From positions 6,339,648-6,403,647 of the forward strand of contig NW_002060947.1 of the NCBI RefSeq assembly GCF_000150275.1: a stretch of 64,000 bases of DNA, read 5' to 3'. Every line of letters begins with the position of its first letter. The stretch's first letter is position 1. Below, piece after piece: positions 9,091-18,488 of this stretch. Position numbers and translations under genes: made by a program. This stretch comes from Trichoplax adhaerens. Lineage: Eukaryota; Animalia; Placozoa. The notes under the pieces are model-generated. The model saw only the letters and a program-made list of their open reading frames with translations. It searched no databases and was not told the DNA's origin.

Positions 9091-9609
9091 TTAAGCAGTT
9101 AAATCCAATCATTTTGGACGCTTTCATCATCACTTAGACATATTGCTGAATATAAAAATGTCTGCTCATAATGCAGGATTTATCTCATAGAAATCGAGCT
9201 AGGTGTATCAAACATATAAAATTGATAAGGGATTTGACTGGATTAGTTAGCTCAATCGTTCAGGCAAGATAGGCAGGCTTGCTCGGCCGTCTTGGCACAG
9301 TGCATAGAGGTACAGACGTGCGGACGGCAATGGCTTTTCCAATAGTGTTCTATGATGCCTTCGGAGCGAATAAAGTAGCAAATTGTGCCTAGAGATGTTG
9401 GCAGTAGCTCGATATTGATGCTATTTTCCTCTAATGTGAATAAGACTAGCTAGTTATGGCTTCTACTACCTTATAGACGTACAAAGCAAAGAGTGCAAGC
9501 TAAGATGAGAACTTGATCACGATTTCCAATTGCATTTACTTGCTACAAATCGATTGATTGGAATTATTACTCTTACCTAGTTCTAATTTGTACAGATTGG
9601 AAGTTGTGG

Positions 9610-12214
9610 ATGCTAGCTATGGGGCGATTAGGTCACTTTCTATCCATAAAATACTCCATCTCTGCTATAGGCAAACAAATCATCATGCCTTATCCATCAT
9701 TACGGGCTGTTGGCATCATGCCGCGATATATCGATAATAACGCATCGGCTTGGATGGTAAATCGTCGTAGTCATTATTCTAATTCAAGGCGATATGATGG
9801 CAATCGACAGATATTACGTTCTAATTGCGATCGGTATCAAAAGATTCCATCGAATCCTCTCTTTAGCATGGAACAGTACAACAAGCCGAAGAGTAGAACT
9901 TTCACTACGAAAATAGTGCAACATTTCCCGAATAATTTTCAACCCTATCTGCGATTAATCCGTTTCGATCGTCCAATTGGTACTTACCTATTATATTTGC
10001 CTTGCACTTGGAGCATCTCGATGGCCGCTACACCAGGCCACTTGCCTGATTTGAAAACGTTGGCTGTATTTGGAATAGGAGCATTAGTCATGAGAGGTGC
10101 AGGGTGTACTATTAATGATATGTGGGATTCCGATTTCGATAAAAAGGTAAACGATTCTGCGATACTACATGTTAGGGTGTTTATCTTATTTGAATCATAG
10201 ATTACTTTATACGTAGATATCGTTAATTATATGGTCTATACAGTATTCCACATAACAGTACAGTAAATGCTTGAGCAGATTTATCTTCTTGCAATTTGGA
10301 TGCCAACTGCTGTAAAGTTATTCATGGAGAAGATGGCATATGATAGCTTGGCAAGCAGTAGAGTGTCATTTGTCTATGCAGTGTTCCACATAACGATACA
10401 GTAGAATGGGTAGATGTTTGAATGGATTTATCTTGTTGTAATTTGGATGCCAACTGACGTAAAGTCATTCAAGGAAAAGATAGCTTATGATAGCATGGTA
10501 ACCAGTAAAGTGTCATTTGTCAATGCAGCGTTCCATATAACGATACAGCAGATGCTTGAACAAATATATCTTGTAATTTGGATGCTAACTGCTGTCAATA
10601 AAGAAATGGCTTACGGTAGCCTAGCAATCAGTAAAGTATCATTTGTCTATGCATTATTCCACATAGCGATACAGTAGATGCTGAAATAGATTTTATCTTG
10701 TTGTAACAATTTGGATGCCTACTGCCGTAAAATTATTTAATGAGAAGATGGCTTATGGTAACCTGGCAATCAGTACAGTATCATTGCACGTACTTTTAAC
10801 GATATCCTTTTCTACTGGCTGTGTTAAGGTGCTAGCTAGGCTGCCATAGAGTATCTACAGGACATAGCTTACATTGAATTAATGAAGAGGATATACTGTA
10901 GTATTACAAATAATAGCTATTTACATAAATGGATTGAGTTAGTAGAATGATGTATCTTATAAATGATGGCTGCATTACATAATTTACATTTAAGTAGTAT
11001 GATGCACCTGACAAATAATCGCTACATGGTACTACTTGTTGTTATTTTGTGCTAGGTTTTCCGAACCCGTGATCGTCCAATTGCTTCTGGCACTATTGCA
11101 CATAAACAAGCATTGGGATTTTTAGCCGCACAATTGACTGTGGGTCTAAGTATATTACTATCTCTTAATCAATACAGTATCATCTTAGGAGCATGTTCCG
11201 TCCCGTTTGTAATTGTCTACCCGTTAATGAAACGTTTCACTTTTTGGCCGCAACTCTTTCTTGGTAATATAGCTAATAGCGATAGAATTTGATTGAATTG
11301 ATTTACAGTCAGACTAGATTTTTACTGGCAATAATTAATTAACACGGTATTATACAGTCTACTGGTATTTCCTGTGAAGAACGCTAATTTTTATAAATGC
11401 ATACTGTAGGGATCACTTTCAATTGGGGTGCTTTGCTAGGTTATGCTGCGGTCAATGGGTATTGCGATTGGAATGTTGTTATTCCATTATATGCAGCTAG
11501 TATCTCTTGGACGTTATTTTACGATACAATTTATGCCCATCAGGTTATTTTAGATTGCTATAATGATATAACACTAATGTCCAATTAACCTATAATTCAT
11601 TTACACTATTTCCCCTTGACGAGTATATTTAATACTTTAATGAAATCATGAACTAAAATTATTGAATCAGTACATAGAATTTAATCCTAAGACTAATTTT
11701 TTATCTTTTTAAAATGGAAAGGATAAAGATGACGATCGTTTCATTAACGTCAAATCCACCGCTCTTCTGTTTGGTGATAATACCAAACATTGGTTATCAC
11801 TTTTCGCCGGTATCACTACGACTGGCTTAGTATTGTCTGGTCTATCAGCTCATCAAACTTGGCCTTATTTTGCTGCTGTTGGAGGTGGATTTGCTCACTT
11901 ACTATACCAGGTTCAATTATATCAGTGACTACAATTTTATACGTTTAATATCTTGCTACCGTACTAGGAAATATGATAACAGTGATATTTACCTTTGTCT
12001 ACCGTTTATCTAAAAACTTGATAAAGTCTTGATAGTCATTTTGGCTAACCCTTTAATTGATTTTTAGATCTACAGTGTGAACATATCTAATACCGATAGT
12101 TGTCTGAAAGTATTCAAATCCAATATGTGGTATGGCTTAATCATATTTACTGGTATTATTGGAGGTAAATTACTACTAAGGGAAGGCAAAGAAGAACAGC
12201 AAAGTAGTCAATGA
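9610..12214 (+). CDS. COQ2: 4-hydroxybenzoate polyprenyltransferase (UbiA family), mitochondrial; exons 9610-10146, 11056-11263, 11410-11543, 11722-11910, 12068-12214
   Basis: Spliced translation has [30 protein letters not shown]|[32 protein letters not shown]|DKDDD and KSTALLFG (the UbiA Asp-rich motifs). All introns are GT-AG and keep frame. The N-terminus is basic and Ser/Arg-rich, like a transit peptide; the start could also be 9685. Confidence 0.96.
10242..10786. repeat. Intronic tandem repeat (about 125-148 bp unit, about 4 copies) in COQ2 intron 1
   Basis: ttccaca/tata.c.atacag, aatttggatgc..actg and atggc.ta.g.tagc recur at about 10242, 10381, 10529 and 10654. Confidence 0.9.
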
Positions 12215-14599
12215 AATAATAAGTCTTAAAATTCCATGTTACGCATGCACAACCACTTTAAAGCTTGCGCTCTCATGCATGGATTTAAGAAATTTAATAT
12301 GAATATTTCTATAAAGATACCTTTAAGTGATAAATTAATAATAATCAACTATTTATTGTAATTTGCGATGTACTTGCATTGTTTTGAGAAACTGATGATG
12401 AAATCTCATGTAGACTAAACTAGAAAATAGCTATCTAAATAAAATTGCAGGCAGCTACACCTTTGCAGCCTCAGATGATTAGAGAGTATCACTCTGTAAG
12501 AAACTTTTTAAAGATTGTCCTTAGTATCAGCGTTGATGGTAATGAAAGTTCCTTTGTGGCTATATTGTACGCTACCACAATGCTAATTTCATAGTATTAT
12601 AACTAATAGCTTTTTGTTAGATTTTTAGTTCTGAAGCTGCATAGTCAAATTTAATTTCTACTCTTCATTCTGAAAACGTTTTAAATTTTAGAAAGGATAG
12701 TAGCAAAATATATACATTATGCTTTAATAATATGCGAATACTGTTTATAGATCACTGTGACAACTGCATATTTGTGCAACGTCTGTAAAATTTAAATAAC
12801 ATTTTATACTGCTATTTTTCGGTCTATAATTGCCATTATACCAAAGTAAAGAGTAATTTGTAATAGAAGAATTGCTGGACTATCAAATTACTGTCATAGA
12901 TGATAATAATACGTATCTTTGTTTAGCGTTATACTTTATGCTCGTAGTAGGTACTTGCAGTATACGATTGTCACAAAACAGCTTTGCAACAAGATAACGT
13001 AATCTACGATCAATAAGTCAATTCCTTGAACTACGTATCAAGGAACGATATCTGCACTATCACGAGCACTTTTCCTCTACTAGCAGACTACACAAAGACT
13101 TAAACGCCTCGTATTTTACGTTAAACACTAAGTTGGACAATTCTTCTTTATTTCACGATATACTGCATTTATATACTATTCCTCAATAGTTCATGAGTCA
13201 TAGTTAATACAATTAACATTAGAATCATTTACTGAATTAGATATTAATTTTAGCTACTGCTCTCTTAATGCAGACAACAGTATTTACGAACATAGACATG
13301 TAATAACTAATACAGAATAGTCAGATTACGATATGTCCTATCACGGAACATTTCCATGATAATTTACAGTCTATCATAAGTAAATTACAATCACAATGAT
13401 TCGAACTGTAAGCAGATGATTTGCATTCCCTATTATAACTATTATAATTTCAGTATGTGTATAAGTGTCACTGTCATAAAAAGTCAGTGCTATATTAAAA
13501 TACAGTATATCCAAATTAGAAGTTAACTAAATAAGGATAGTCTAACAGAATTATCCTAACAAAGTTATTTCTACTGTAATACAGTATTTAACACTGTAAC
13601 AACGATACCTTACGATCGTTACTTGTAGTTGCTAGTAGCACTGCAAAAAAAATCGGTCTTCTGATTGTAAAGTTGTTACCAAATGATAATATATTGCTAA
13701 AACTGATCCTTTTTAACCCTAACCTGTCCAAATTCTACCGATATGTAGTGCAAATTAATGGTATTGCCGATTAAAGTTTGCGCATTAAACAGTAATATAT
13801 TTACTGAGAACCAATTCCAGGTACTCTAGGATGACCTTAACTGCTGGATAGCAATTTTTCATAAATTTATATAGATAGATGTAATGATTGAATTGTAGTT
13901 TTATTGACTCATTATTCCTGATAATCTGCTACTACGTATATAAACGTTATTGATATTCATTTGTAAGCAAATAAAATTTAATTTTTTATATCTACGGTAG
14001 TTACAAACATTATTTATTAAAGCTTTAAATATGCTCCAATGATTACTAATATCGAGTAAACTGGAAATGCAATCTAATAGCCTTATTATGAACAATATAA
14101 AATACGTTTCATCGAATTGAAGTTGAGTTTAAGATGTGCACAGATATTATCAGTTAATTCATTAATAGAACGGAGACTTAAGAGATCTATCGCCCTAATA
14201 ATGTAGTAAACCAACTGAATTCAGATGTAAAGCAAAATTTATCATCATGAAAAGTGCATATCGAGTAAAAATATATAACAATTAATAATTTTAATTATTT
14301 TTACCATACTGAAACAGAATAGGATGTAAAAGTTCATAGAGATGCCAATCAACAAACAAGATATTGACAATTACATTAATCTACTTGAAATGAATAATTC
14401 TATCTGCAGATAGAATTGATAGCATGCAAAAAAATAAAATTGCAAGGATTCAATTATATCTTAATTGAAAAATGTCATATTCATTAGCAGAATATTTTAA
14501 CAGCTTCAAAGTAAACAAATAATAATTGAAGAAGAATGACTATTTCTGCCTATGGACAGCATTAAAATGAACTAAAAATTATAATGGAAAATTTGAACA

Positions 14600-17500
14600 T
14601 TAACAAGTCGTAAATAGCATGCTATCTCGCCAAAAAGCATGCTGTAAGACGTGCATACTAGATTTAGCCATTGGCTTGGCATTAACAATAGGTGTTGATC
14701 GATCTCTTGGAAAGATGGTAGGTGCAAGAAAATGGATCTTTTGGATATTCATGCTTTCAATGTATGCTTGCAATGAACTGTAGAACATGCCTACTTCAGT
14801 TGGGCCGTAACTACCGTCAGAAAGAGTAACATGGCCACCTAATGCGATTATTCTCTGTGATTATAAAGCAAATAGTAATATAGTACGGTTAGTATTATTC
14901 GGTAAATTTGGAAAATTATGTATCTCAAGAAAATTACTTGCAAGGTAAAATAAAAATGAATAATTCTAAGCATCATAAGTCTGGAAAATCTTGATTACCC
15001 GTAAAATATGGCGCTGTGGATAAGGATCATCTAATTCGGTTGTTAGCGCTTTACTATTGATTTCAAATAATCCACCATATTCGGCAATGTATCTTATATT
15101 TCGATCGATTTTTTCCCAAATAACTTCTGTTAATTCAAAATTTTTCCTAAAGGTGTAAATTAGATCGAATTTTCCAACCACTTCTGGATGTGTTTTAGTG
15201 ACTAATTCATATTGGCAATCGAAATATTCACAAAATAACTCTTCTGTATTGCCAACAGCTTCTTCGGCTTTCGTAAAACTATCGTTGTTTATATCGATCG
15301 GAATTCCACGAATATGACGAACCATTCCTACCACGTAATCAGGATTAAAATGCTGACGAGAGTCATTAATATCTTGGATAGAATCAGCTCCAAAGTAGAA
15401 CGTTTCCATACCGACTAATAATTTAATATGCTCTTTGTAATGATGCTGCAAACGTCTAGCTTCTCTTATGTACTTTTCAAAATTTTCTTGGAGAAATTGG
15501 ACCGTTTTCTTTGCCTAAGATGATTAAAAATTTTACAACATTGATTCATGATCAGGTTTATTTCTTCAATTTTAAAGAGAGAATTAATCTAAGCCAGTAC
15601 GAATATGAACCAAAAACTATACTACACTGATTAATAATTAGTTAGACTGAATTATCTAAGCGTAATGGGATAATAGATCTTTCAGGCAGCATAAAAGCAA
15701 TACAAAAATTTTTACAGCACTAATTTATGATCAGGTGTAATTTTAAAGTTTAAAAAGACAATAATTCATCTAAGACAACACGGAAATAACACTAATGTAA
15801 AATTAAATGAGTAGATAATATTTAATATTAATACGGAATGATTTTGCAGCTCTTGATATTGATGTGTAAGACTTAATTATGTGGAGTAGCATAGCCTGGA
15901 TTATAGCTCTAAAAATAGCTGGTAAAGTTTGCGAACTACGCCAACTAGCTATTGATAGAAATATATAAGCAAAAATTATATAATAAAAATGCTCATTTAT
16001 GAGTAAGCTACTTTTAGAGTAATTATCATGAAAAATAATATGTTTCAAATATTAGCTATAATTATTATACTAATTTTAAAATGAAGATTTTCTCCTTTAA
16101 TCGCCAACTCTGCTTGGAGGTACAAGAATTGATGAAAGATCGATTACGCTATGTGCAGTTATAGCACGTTACTAATATCGAATTAAGCTCATAACCATAT
16201 CAAAAAGAAGATGGCGCTTTTTTTAGGGGTATTACATAACTAGTCAATTGTGATGCTATAATCAATGACGAGTTAATTCTGGATTTTAAGTGCATTAACT
16301 TTTGAAATCGAAATTAAGTAGCGCAAATATTCAGAAATCAATAGTTCTCGCGAACAGTGTAACAACTAATAAAAGATACCTCTTGATCAAGATACAGTAG
16401 CATGCTAAATAGGGAAGAACTTAAGTAAAGCCTTGATTAAGTTAGTGTTAAAATATATGTTTTGTTTCAGTTTTATAATTTACATCTAATATTTTGGAGG
16501 TAACGTTGTTTGTACGAGAGCCATGTTGTAGCGATCTAAGCATATTAATATTGTAAAAATTCTTCAGAGTTAATTTACAGAAGGTGCTAGTTGGACACAT
16601 TTTATCGTGTGTAGTTCAGTAGATTTACGTTACATTTGAAATTAGAGCAGATTAGTACATTTAGAAAATTCAGTAAAGCTAATCAGACTTTAAACATGTA
16701 TTATAAGTAGAGTAGGCTATGATTAGCTCAAATAACCTGATTTATAATCTAAAAGCTATCCTTAAGGCGAGTAGCTTATTTTAATCGCAAACTGGGAGTT
16801 GATCAAAATCGATTATGGAATCAGGTCAAATTTATCGATAACTAATATGTCATTGCATGACAAAAAAACTAGTATAGTAGATTACAATGAAGTAAAAACC
16901 AAGGTCATTAAACTTTAAATTATATATCACAAGTTTGGTGGACTATTACCGGTTTAAGTGGTTTAATCTATCCTGTAAAGCTATATAATGACGAATAGCC
17001 TATTGTAATAATAAACTCATGATTAAAATTGATCGAGAGATCAAATGCAAACAGATCAATAACTTGTTACTGCTGAGGAAATATTACTATCGTAGATTGT
17101 AGCGCTTTAACTATCTTAATTTGTCATCTAGAGCTTAATTCACAAACAGATAGTATATTACAGTAGCAAATCAAAGATTTATAATGAAAATTAGATATCA
17201 TTGAATGAATATTTAGACATTATATATGAGAAATTTAAATGATGATTTTACCTATCCCAAAAACTTATTTACCATCTAGAACCTACAGTAGCTTAAGAAT
17301 CCAGTAATTCATTATAGCAATAATTCCGTGATGCTCAACTTAATCATGAAAAATATCTAATTTTATCATCTAAATCTTGACTCAAAGACAGGTAGCGCAT
17401 TAGAGTAGCAAATACATGGCTTATCATGGGATTAGATGCCATTTGATGAATGATTAAACATACTATATTACATCATCAGAGAATATAAATGATGATTATA

Positions 17501-18488
17501 CTCGTTTTATAAACTCATTTTACCATCTAGAGCCTGGTTTGCGAATGAATAACTCCAGGATGCTGCAGTTAGTCACTTTAAATATCATTCGCAGCTTAAC
17601 TCAGAGATAAATAGCGTATTACCGTGACAATCTCAAGATTTATCATGATATTCAATACCATGGAACGAATAACTAGACACACTATATAGGATAAGAGAAT
17701 TAAAATGGTGATTATATTCGTTCTAAAAAACTCATTTTATCATCTAAAGCCTAAATAAAGACTATCGTTATGAGTTTCAGCAATTACTCCAAGACATTAA
17801 AAGTTAATCATGAGACCAAAACTTGAATAATCAATACGATGTCTTATATGGTAGTATAAGGAAATATCAATTTGCACACAAGATCGATTAGTTTAACAGA
17901 TAAACTACCAACTTCTACAGAATTCTTTCGATTGGCTACGTCGAGCTATGTATACGGGATTATAGATTGCTGGTACTCTGAACAAATGCTATTTTACAGT
18001 TTAATTTTTAGGACAATTAATTTATTCTTATGAATGTCACACTTAAGCGTATCCAGCGGCAACATTAAATGAAATATTTCATTGCTGGCTTGAATAATTA
18101 TAGTTGTTACATTTAGATCACATACTATGGATTGGTGTTCTACTGCCACTAGTATCATGAATAATAAAGTGCCATATAAATCAAAGTTATCAAGATTAGT
18201 TTGATATAAATCCATGCAAATTGACGCCATTTAATGCAGACAAGGTCGTTCAAAAAAGTTTAAAAATCGAAATAATCTTACGATGAAAAACTCAATATTA
18301 TTTTAGAGCAATGGCTATTTAACCTCGACTTCTTCTTTATATAACTGCTCTTCTTTATAGCGAGGCATCGATTCGCTCATGCCAAAGTAAGCATAACCAA
18401 TTTCAATGGCACGCAAAACACATGATTCTAAATGGCCTTTACCAAATTGGCAAAATTGCCCACTATGACTGTTATAAGAGAATGGCAT
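14600..18488 (-). CDS. PHP-domain histidinol-phosphatase (HIS2/HisK-like) homologue, about 311 aa, with degenerate metal ligands; exons 18488-18324, 15514-14999, 14854-14600
   Basis: Exon 1 MPFSYNSHSGQFCQFGKGHLESCVLRAIEIGYAYFGMSESMPRY matches the fungal His2 N-terminus pattern (HHSHSGQFC..H...TEHMPR). Exon 2 has Y.REARRLQ, LVGMET, DYVVGMVRH, PEVVGKFDL, EINSKAL and PYP. Exon 3 has GGHVTLSDGSYG. Both introns are phase-0 GT-AG and there are no internal stops. Confidence 0.88.
17190..17755. repeat. Three degenerate copies (about 230 bp spacing) in intron 1 of the HIS2-like gene
   Basis: aaatgatgatt.ta...aaact.att.tta.catctaga.cct occurs at about 17237, 17487 and 17703. Confidence 0.75.

What the first reader, a model, noticed from the sequence alone, without database searches (positions are those of the whole stretch)
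14600..18488. Intact HIS2-like PHP protein with its trimetal active site largely replaced: candidate pseudo-phosphatase
Seen: a spliced 311-aa ORF with no disablements that follows the His2 motif order throughout. Known: PHP histidinol-phosphate phosphatases bind three metals through about nine ligands (HxH, a third His, (T/S)EH, Glu, VGSVH, GHxD, DxH). Here, by eye alignment, these read N-S-H (first His to Asn), FCQF (third His lost), SES (His to Ser), GMET (Glu kept), VGMVR (His to Arg), GKFD (His to Lys) and SDGSY (Asp to Gly, His to Tyr). About 7 of 9 ligands are lost while the flanking scaffold residues are kept. Inference: selective ligand loss with a conserved fold suggests a repurposed non-catalytic protein. 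Arg and Lys in former metal positions could bind a phosphorylated or anionic ligand directly, as a metabolite sensor or scaffold.
Basis: partly seen in the sequence, partly recalled or inferred. Interest (0 to 1): 0.85.

Follow-up and report, generated by a model that had tools for sequence, protein, structure and literature searches.

The report
Metal-site-ablated His2-type PHP protein, Trichoplax
Trichoplax, an animal that cannot make histidine, keeps one expressed and strongly conserved copy of a fungal-type histidinol-phosphate phosphatase gene in which seven of the nine metal-binding residues are replaced, so it is most likely a "dead enzyme" put to another use.

Summary
A three-exon, 311-codon gene on the minus strand (18488-14600) belongs to the HisJ/His2 PHP family. 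It is the public Trichoplax adhaerens gene TRIADDRAFT_25985, annotated at 309 aa.

Seven of the nine trimetal ligands are replaced: N6, F15, S40, R121, K170, G241, Y243. H8 and E92 remain. These columns are near-invariant in 149 relatives. 33 of 41 conserved family columns are kept.

The gene is not decaying. A divergent second placozoan lineage keeps every substitution, with dN/dS about 0.05 and dS about 1.2. It is the only PHP locus in the genome, and IGPD, histidinol dehydrogenase and HisG were not found.

An unidentified intron-rich relative with all canonical ligands has the same three-exon structure. It groups with a choanoflagellate and an ichthyosporean. This favours descent within opisthokonts, though the tree does not resolve it.

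Best reading: a metal-free PHP barrel that acts by binding, with Arg and Lys filling the metal site as in E. coli Pol III alpha. Loss of catalysis is inferred, not shown. The ligand-sensor idea is untested. This is a new variant of a known kind.

The parts
18324..18488 (-). Exon 1, 55 codons, ATG at 18488. It carries former ligand positions N6 (18471-18473), H8 (18465-18467, kept), F15 (18444-18446) and S40 (18369-18371).
   Evidence: RNA joint 15514|18324 in three studies. Orthologous exon 1 in L007/L008 and L009 keeps N6, H8, F15, S40 and the GT donor after codon 55.
15515..18323 (-). Intron 1, 2809 nt, GT..AG, phase 0.
   Evidence: Skipped in the contigs of X5, X6 and X7. An intron at the same position and phase occurs in the canonical-ligand relatives L011 and L012. 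No Rfam family matches inside it.
14999..15514 (-). Exon 2, 172 codons, the core of the PHP barrel. It carries E92 (15404-15406, kept), R121 (15317-15319, family His) and K170 (15170-15172, family His). F94 and M119 replace the family's E/D and S.
   Evidence: TIGR01856 122.5 bits. The orthologue in L003/L004 is 84% identical with R, K, F and M kept.
14855..14998 (-). Intron 2, 144 nt, GT..AG, phase 0.
   Evidence: Skipped in the contigs of all four runs, including X10 which is on record as RNA-seq. The same position is used in the second placozoan (239 nt, not alignable) and in L011 and L012, and within about one codon in the Hyaloraphidium-like fungus L010.
14600..14854 (-). Exon 3, 84 codons plus TAA (14600-14602). 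It carries G241 (14813-14815, family Asp) and Y243 (14807-14809, family His), and the C-terminal hairpin with the family's conserved Trp.
   Evidence: 94% identical to the second placozoan, dN/dS 0.021.

Best explanation
This is the single placozoan descendant of the opisthokont His2-type (PHP, K04486) histidinol-phosphate phosphatase. It has been kept after the rest of the histidine pathway was lost and converted into a metal-free PHP barrel.

Shown:
- The gene is real, spliced and transcribed.
- It is single copy.
- Its fold is predicted to be the histidinol-phosphatase (beta/alpha)7 barrel.
- Seven of nine metal ligands are replaced.
- The replacements were fixed before the sampled placozoan lineages split, and the protein has since been under strong purifying selection.

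Inferred:
- With no ligand left for the gamma metal, one of three for the beta metal and two of four for the alpha metal, the trinuclear centre cannot form. Canonical phosphomonoester hydrolysis is therefore lost. (The ligand-to-site assignment is from memory of the L. lactis enzyme and was not checked here.)
- The Arg121 and Lys170 side chains fill the space and charge of the missing metals and pair with the retained Glu39, Glu92 and Asp240. [quoted passage not shown]
- The protein now works by binding a partner protein or a small, probably anionic, ligand in the conserved cleft, not by catalysis.
For: Family and fold: TIGR01856 122.5 bits on exon 2. The AlphaFold model has pLDDT 91.3 and pTM 0.89. 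The best Foldseek matches are histidinol phosphatases: 2YXO at TM 0.73/0.84, then 3DCP/6NLR and 4GYF.

Ligand loss. 33 of 41 conserved family columns are kept, and the changes concentrate on ligand columns (p = 1.2e-4).

Constraint: dN/dS 0.052, dS 1.23, 275 of 311 residues identical. The introns are unalignable but their positions are kept. All substituted residues are conserved. The former catalytic face differs at 7.6% of positions against 13.2% elsewhere, which is not significant.

Expression: spliced contigs in three studies. No base differences at any ligand codon, so RNA editing does not restore His.

No pathway and no paralogue.

Precedent: metal-free PHP domains with Arg in the metal sites (PMC3666897). 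Complex corals keep the K04486 homologue alone, without the rest of the pathway (PMC6214176).
Against: No biochemical data exist. H8, E39, E92, H122, D172, N208 and D240 are retained, and with N6 they could still hold one metal or support different chemistry. The model was also built from an alignment of canonical enzymes, which biases it toward the canonical fold. dS is close to saturation, so the dN/dS value is approximate. No binding partner or ligand is known.
Confidence: 0.6

Rival explanations
1. It is still an enzyme, with new chemistry. This would be a mononuclear-metal or metal-independent hydrolase or transferase. It would use the retained H8, E92, D240, H122 and D172 and the new R121, K170 and Y243 on a substrate unrelated to histidine synthesis.
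For: Strong constraint on the former catalytic face. Several polar cleft residues are retained. Complex corals keep the canonical homologue without the pathway, so animal members may already have had a second substrate (PMC6214176).
Against: All characterised PHP hydrolases cited here depend on the full metal cluster (PMC3666897). Only 2 of 9 ligands remain. The family's conserved Lys at the column of Thermus R197 is also lost.
Confidence: 0.27
2. It is a working histidinol-phosphate phosphatase, as the automatic UniRef name says.
For: Family membership by sequence and the UniRef name.
Against: 7 of 9 ligands are lost. IGPD, histidinol dehydrogenase and HisG were not found in the genome, so there would be neither substrate nor use for the product.
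Confidence: 0.03
3. It is a neutrally decaying relic, or an annotation artefact.
For: The pathway is lost and intron 1 is long.
Against: dN/dS is 0.05 with dS about 1.2. The frame and splice sites are intact in two lineages (three for exon 1). Spliced transcripts occur in three studies.
Confidence: 0.02
4. On origin only: the gene entered the placozoan lineage by horizontal transfer from an early-diverging fungus, rather than by descent from the opisthokont ancestor.
For: The nearest rows by path length are chytrid and monoblepharid fungi. A first AU test of placozoa + Salpingoeca + Sphaeroforma gave p = 0.033.
Against: With better sampling the fungi form a clade that excludes the placozoans (91/82). 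A holozoan-type clade including the placozoans is not rejected (p = 0.18), nor is placozoa + L012/P0284 (p = 0.27). The 55-codon exon 1 and both phase-0 intron positions match the L011/L012/P0284 organism, which groups with a choanoflagellate and an ichthyosporean. Corals carry K04486 homologues.
Confidence: 0.2

Closest known systems
His2/HisJ PHP-type histidinol-phosphate phosphatases (TIGR01856, K04486; yeast His2, L. lactis HisK 4GYF, T. thermophilus 2YXO, Listeria 3DCP/6NLR)
   Same: Clear homologue with the same motif order. The same (beta/alpha)7 barrel is predicted (TM 0.73-0.86 to 2YXO). 33 of 41 conserved family columns are kept, including the eukaryote-type C-terminal hairpin.
   Different: Seven of nine metal ligands are replaced, as are the neighbouring Ser (now Met), the Glu/Asp (now Phe) and the conserved Lys (now Thr). 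The host genome lacks the other histidine-pathway enzymes searched for.
Variant (metal-free) PHP domain of E. coli and other proteobacterial DNA polymerase III alpha (PMC3666897)
   Same: A PHP barrel that lost most metal ligands (5 of 9 in E. coli) but kept its structure. Basic side chains replace ligands and occupy the metal sites. The role is structural or binding.
   Different: That one is a domain inside a polymerase and binds the epsilon subunit. This one is a stand-alone protein of the histidinol-phosphatase subfamily in an animal. Different ligand positions carry the basic residues: 6 and 7 here, 1 and 9 in E. coli.
K04486 homologues kept in complex corals that lack the rest of the histidine pathway (Ying et al. 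2018, PMC6214176)
   Same: An animal keeps only the PHP-type histidinol phosphatase gene after losing the pathway.
   Different: The ligand state of the coral proteins was not examined here. The unidentified three-exon relatives I could read (L011 exons 1-2, L012, P0284) keep the canonical ligands, and the placozoan protein does not.
RNase P/MRP protein Rpp30/Rpp1 (PHP-like barrel used as an RNP scaffold)
   Same: A eukaryotic PHP-like barrel working without a catalytic metal cluster.
   Different: Only a distant structural match (TM about 0.40-0.44) and no sequence relationship was detected. Not the same family.

Membership tests
HisJ/His2 PHP histidinol-phosphatase family (TIGR01856 / K04486) | Sequence match above the family's curated cut-off | tested here: met
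   Exon 2 alone scores 122.5 bits against a cut-off of 90.2, E 2.3e-35. Exon 1 scores 21.6 bits on the N-terminal part of the same model.
HisJ/His2 PHP histidinol-phosphatase family (TIGR01856 / K04486) | PHP (beta/alpha)7 barrel fold | tested here: met
   AlphaFold2 model with pLDDT 91.3. The Foldseek top hits are all histidinol phosphatases, with TM up to 0.74/0.86. The prediction used an alignment of canonical enzymes.
HisJ/His2 PHP histidinol-phosphatase family (TIGR01856 / K04486) | Nine residues that hold the trinuclear metal centre (H, H, D/H, H, E, H, C/H, D/N, H; PMC3666897) | tested here: not met
   Only H8 and E92 remain. The others read N6, F15, S40, R121, K170, G241 and Y243.
HisJ/His2 PHP histidinol-phosphatase family (TIGR01856 / K04486) | Histidinol-phosphate phosphatase activity (EC 3.1.3.15) | not testable with these tools
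   Needs an enzyme assay or yeast his2 complementation.
HisJ/His2 PHP histidinol-phosphatase family (TIGR01856 / K04486) | Histidine biosynthesis pathway present in the same genome | tested here: not met
   Six-frame searches of the 105.6-Mb assembly found no IGPD, histidinol dehydrogenase or HisG. The same type of search found the PHP gene.
Pseudoenzyme (catalytically dead homologue under selection) | Homology to an active enzyme family with loss of residues essential for catalysis | tested here: met
Pseudoenzyme (catalytically dead homologue under selection) | Maintained by purifying selection and expressed | tested here: met
   dN/dS 0.052. Spliced RNA contigs in three studies.
Pseudoenzyme (catalytically dead homologue under selection) | Demonstrated lack of catalytic activity | not testable with these tools
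   Needs biochemistry.
Variant metal-free PHP domains (Pol III alpha type) | Basic side chains physically occupying the vacated metal sites | not tested

The most novel reading that the evidence does not exclude
Placozoans turned the last relic of the animal ancestor's histidine pathway into a stand-alone, metal-free PHP-barrel receptor. Its Arg/Lys-lined cleft binds a phosphorylated or other anionic metabolite, or a partner protein. This would be the first eukaryotic stand-alone PHP pseudoenzyme, and a case of an amino-acid-biosynthesis enzyme surviving pathway loss through a binding function.
Probability: 0.35. Interest if true: 0.7.

Novelty: new variant of a known kind. Interest (0 to 1): 0.55.

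Why it matters
Animals are textbook histidine auxotrophs. Finding one pathway gene kept for a very long time in Placozoa, with its catalytic metal centre dismantled yet under strong constraint, has three uses.

- It gives a clean natural example of enzyme-to-pseudoenzyme conversion in a stand-alone PHP barrel.
- With the coral data, it suggests the His2-type protein had or acquired a second role in early animals.
- It corrects a misleading automatic "histidinol-phosphatase" name and a 2-residue error in the public gene model.

The protein is small, soluble-looking and single-domain, so the hypothesis is cheap to test.

Tried and rejected
1. Shifted ligands. Three independent alignments gave the same map. 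Rejected.

2. Pseudogene. Rejected by dN/dS and spliced RNA.

3. RNA editing restoring His codons. The contigs show only three differences in exon 2 (two synonymous, plus N131S) and none at ligand codons.

4. A canonical paralogue elsewhere in the genome. TIGR01856, PF02811 and the canonical protein P0284 all find only this locus.

5. An intron-hosted RNA gene. The Rfam scan was empty.

6. A burst of change on the placozoan stem. The stem is long (0.97-1.18), but the root-to-tip length is similar to the Salpingoeca, Sphaeroforma and L012/P0284 branches. I make no claim of acceleration.

7. Naming the organism behind L011, L012 and P0284. The cluster look-ups gave no names. "Probably cnidarian" is only an inference from GC of 39-40%, kilobase introns and the coral paper.

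8. The paper on the L. lactis enzyme (PMC3570733) is not held. Statements about substrate-binding residues and about which ligands serve which metal site rest on memory and on the alignment to 2YXO.

9. Pocket superposition. The model's coordinates are not exposed to scripts.

10. Papers. Searches for the locus tag, "Trichoplax" + histidinol and "Trichoplax" + PHP domain found nothing on this protein.

11. A word-index protein search with exon 2 found only the Trichoplax protein and one placozoan fragment. The profile search and the representative search were needed to reach relatives.
Full report
WHAT IS THERE

On the minus strand lies a three-exon gene:
- exon 1, 18488-18324, 55 codons
- intron 1, 18323-15515, 2809 nt
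- exon 2, 15514-14999, 172 codons
- intron 2, 14998-14855, 144 nt
- exon 3, 14854-14600, 84 codons plus TAA

Both introns are GT..AG and phase 0.

The window lies at G000:C1410:6339648-6403647 of a 105.6-Mb, 1414-contig assembly. The encoded protein is the public [quoted passage not shown], which UniRef names histidinol-phosphatase (P0154, 309 aa).

HOW THE SPLICED MODEL WAS HANDLED

For whole-protein steps I used the database protein id P0154. The joined 311-aa model itself was never sent to any search or folding tool. Exons were joined only inside local scripts, read from the files, for dN/dS and trees.

EXPRESSION AND SPLICING

Contigs from runs of three different studies (X5, X6, X7) run through all three exons. 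They show a 144-base skip (14854|14999) and a 2809-base skip (15514|18324). A fourth run, X10, is on record as RNA-seq and carries the 144-base joint.

The GT after codon 55 is also conserved in two other placozoan-like sequences.

The contigs differ from the window at only three exon-2 positions: two synonymous changes and N131S. None lies at a ligand codon, so editing does not restore the lost histidines. Contigs cannot give expression levels.

FAMILY AND FOLD

- Exon 2 alone scores 122.5 bits (E 2e-35) on TIGR01856 hisJ_fam, cut-off 90.2, and hits Pfam PHP.
- The AlphaFold2 model of P0154, built with 17 relatives, has mean pLDDT 91.3 and pTM 0.89.
- Its best Foldseek matches are the solved histidinol phosphatases: T. 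thermophilus 2YXO (TM 0.73/0.84), Listeria 3DCP/6NLR and L. lactis 4GYF.
- YcdX, PolX PHP domains and Rpp30-type RNase P proteins follow far behind.

THE METAL SITE

PHP enzymes hold three metals with nine residues: H, H, D/H, H, E, H, C/H, D/N, H (PMC3666897). In an alignment with 149 relatives from a 1.8-billion-protein search, the family columns are near-invariant:
- first His, 62 of 65
- third-position His, 66 of 72
- the (S/T)EH His, 76 of 80
- Glu, 145 of 147
- the VGSVH His, 148 of 149
- the GHFD His, 148 of 149
- Asp, 89 of 105
- last His, 88 of 106

The Trichoplax protein reads N6, H8, F15, S40, E92, R121, K170, G241, Y243 in 311-aa numbering. Subtract 2 after residue 53 for P0154 numbering. 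Two ligands are kept and seven are lost. HMMER's alignment to 2YXO gives the same equivalences for the last five.

Of 41 family columns conserved at 85% or more, 33 are kept. The eight changed are four ligands in exon 1 and exon 2's two (N6, F15, S40, R121, K170), two immediate neighbours (G16, M119) and T214. T214 replaces a Lys that is 93% conserved and aligns with R197 of the Thermus enzyme. G241, Y243 and F94 fall just under the 85% threshold. Counting the nine ligand columns against 34 other conserved columns gives 7/9 versus 3/34 changed, p = 1.2e-4. Among the best 150 representatives, only the second placozoan shares R and K at these columns.

IS IT DECAYING? NO.

Logan contigs of an unnamed sample (L003/L004 for exons 2-3, L007/L008 for exon 1) carry an orthologue with the same exon boundaries. 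An ENA metagenome contig (L009) adds a third exon 1.

Between Trichoplax and this second lineage:
- 275 of 311 residues are identical
- dN = 0.064 and dS = 1.23, which is near saturation
- dN/dS = 0.052 overall (exon 1: 0.03, exon 2: 0.08, exon 3: 0.02)
- intron 2 is 239 versus 144 nt and cannot be aligned

Every replaced ligand residue, and F94 and M119, is identical in the lineages seen. The former catalytic face differs at 7.6% of positions against 13.2% elsewhere, and all those changes are conservative. The difference is not significant, p = 0.18. A stretch the model leaves at low confidence (PRDRSTPIV) is identical in both lineages.

GENOMIC SETTING

Six-frame searches of the whole assembly give these results:
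- This is the only match to TIGR01856 and PF02811, and to a canonical holozoan-type relative.
- There are no matches to IGPD, histidinol dehydrogenase or HisG.

So there is no histidine pathway and no canonical paralogue. An assembly can always miss genes.

ORIGIN

Named relatives are fungi of every major lineage, a choanoflagellate (Salpingoeca urceolata), an ichthyosporean (Sphaeroforma arctica) and Desulfobacterota-type bacteria.

Two metagenome contigs (L011; L012 at 40% GC, with introns of 1.2-2.1 kb) and a transcript-derived 313-aa protein (P0284) come from an unidentified organism. L012 and P0284 carry all nine canonical ligands; L011, which ends before exon 3, carries those of exons 1 and 2. 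The gene architecture is the same as in Trichoplax: a 55-codon exon 1, a phase-0 intron after EE(V/I/T)(E/A), and a phase-0 intron after IL(K/E). A Hyaloraphidium-like fungus has an intron within about a codon of the second position.

In the better-sampled tree the eukaryotic sequences form a clade (97/91) of three groups:
- the placozoans
- a group of L012/P0284 + Salpingoeca + Sphaeroforma + one unknown (92/92)
- the fungi (91/82)

AU tests do not reject a holozoan-type clade that includes the placozoans (p = 0.18), nor placozoans + L012/P0284 (p = 0.27). An earlier, poorer sample gave p = 0.033 for placozoans + the two protists alone.

Ying et al. 2018 (PMC6214176) report a full fungal-like histidine pathway in robust corals. 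They also report that the K04486 histidinol phosphatase homologue alone persists in complex corals that lack the pathway. Together this favours descent from the opisthokont ancestor over transfer from a fungus, roughly 0.8 to 0.2, but does not prove it.

The placozoan stem is long (about 1.0). Its root-to-tip length is like that of the other holozoan branches, so I claim no rate burst. The changes simply fall on columns that are otherwise invariant.

HOW IT MOST LIKELY WORKS

Shown: an intact, transcribed, single-copy, strongly constrained PHP barrel whose trinuclear ligand set is gone.

Inferred:
- The trimetal centre cannot assemble. By my recollection of the L. lactis enzyme's site assignments, no ligand is left for the gamma metal, one of three for beta and two of four for alpha. 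Canonical phosphomonoesterase activity is therefore lost.
- Arg121 and Lys170 replace the two His of the beta site. They probably fill the space and charge of the missing metals against Glu92, Glu39 and Asp240. This is the solution documented for variant PHP domains of Pol III alpha, where Arg is the commonest replacement and sits in the metal sites.
- The conserved cleft now serves binding.

I put about 0.6 on a non-catalytic binding or scaffold role. I put about 0.27 on altered catalysis (one metal or none), about 0.03 on a working histidinol phosphatase and about 0.02 on decay. The loss of the conserved Lys at the Thermus R197 column argues against the canonical phosphate-binding mode.

NOVELTY

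The gene is already in public databases, and automatic annotation misnames it. No paper in the searchable library mentions it. Metal-free PHP domains are known from bacterial polymerases. Retention of this gene without the pathway has been reported for complex corals.

What I have not seen described is a stand-alone His2-type protein with the metal centre dismantled and fixed under purifying selection in an animal phylum. That makes it a new variant of a known kind. It is of moderate to good interest and easy to test.

Noticed in passing
window 18318-18329: The public gene model (P0154, 309 aa) ends exon 1 six bases earlier than the RNA contigs do. The contigs skip 2809 bases, not 2815, so the protein has two more residues (Val-Glu) than annotated.
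   Followed up: yes
window 15793-15834 (inside intron 1): A 41-base AT-rich piece matches moderately to highly covered contigs in all four runs laid. Those contigs continue with unrelated sequence on both sides. This is probably a dispersed repeat or a low-complexity match. No Rfam family matches there.
   Followed up: partly
window 15288 (exon 2, codon 131): A T>C difference in the contigs of two studies (X6, X7) changes Asn131 to Ser, which looks like a polymorphism. Two further differences (15236, 15251) are synonymous.
   Followed up: partly
window 14684-14710 (residues 276-284): The model's low-confidence stretch, PRDRSTPIV, is identical between the two placozoan lineages. A conserved flexible loop with an RxRS/TP-like sequence could be a modification or docking site. 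This is speculation.
   Followed up: no
window 9604-10200 (+): An open frame that looks by eye like part of a UbiA-type prenyltransferase (COQ2-like). This fits an ordinary animal nuclear neighbourhood. It was not tested with any tool.
   Followed up: no
L012:7727-11077; L011:2557-4492; P0284: An unidentified eukaryote with kilobase introns has a three-exon His2-type gene with the same intron positions as Trichoplax. L012 and P0284 show all nine canonical ligands; L011 ends before exon 3. It groups with a choanoflagellate and an ichthyosporean. It may be a cnidarian, but no tool named it.
   Followed up: partly
L005:3857-4747; P0002, P0158, P0162: A small bacterial group, including Deltaproteobacteria bacterium TL4 and a contig with oxaloacetate decarboxylase and ABC-transporter neighbours, carries a His2-type protein. 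It branches next to the eukaryotic clade, apart from the main Desulfobacterota group. This may reflect transfer between domains.
   Followed up: no
window 13098-14399: RNA contigs carrying the gene run on for 460 to 1300 bases past the stop codon. This is either a long 3' UTR or a merge with a converging neighbour's transcript. Contigs cannot tell the two apart.
   Followed up: no
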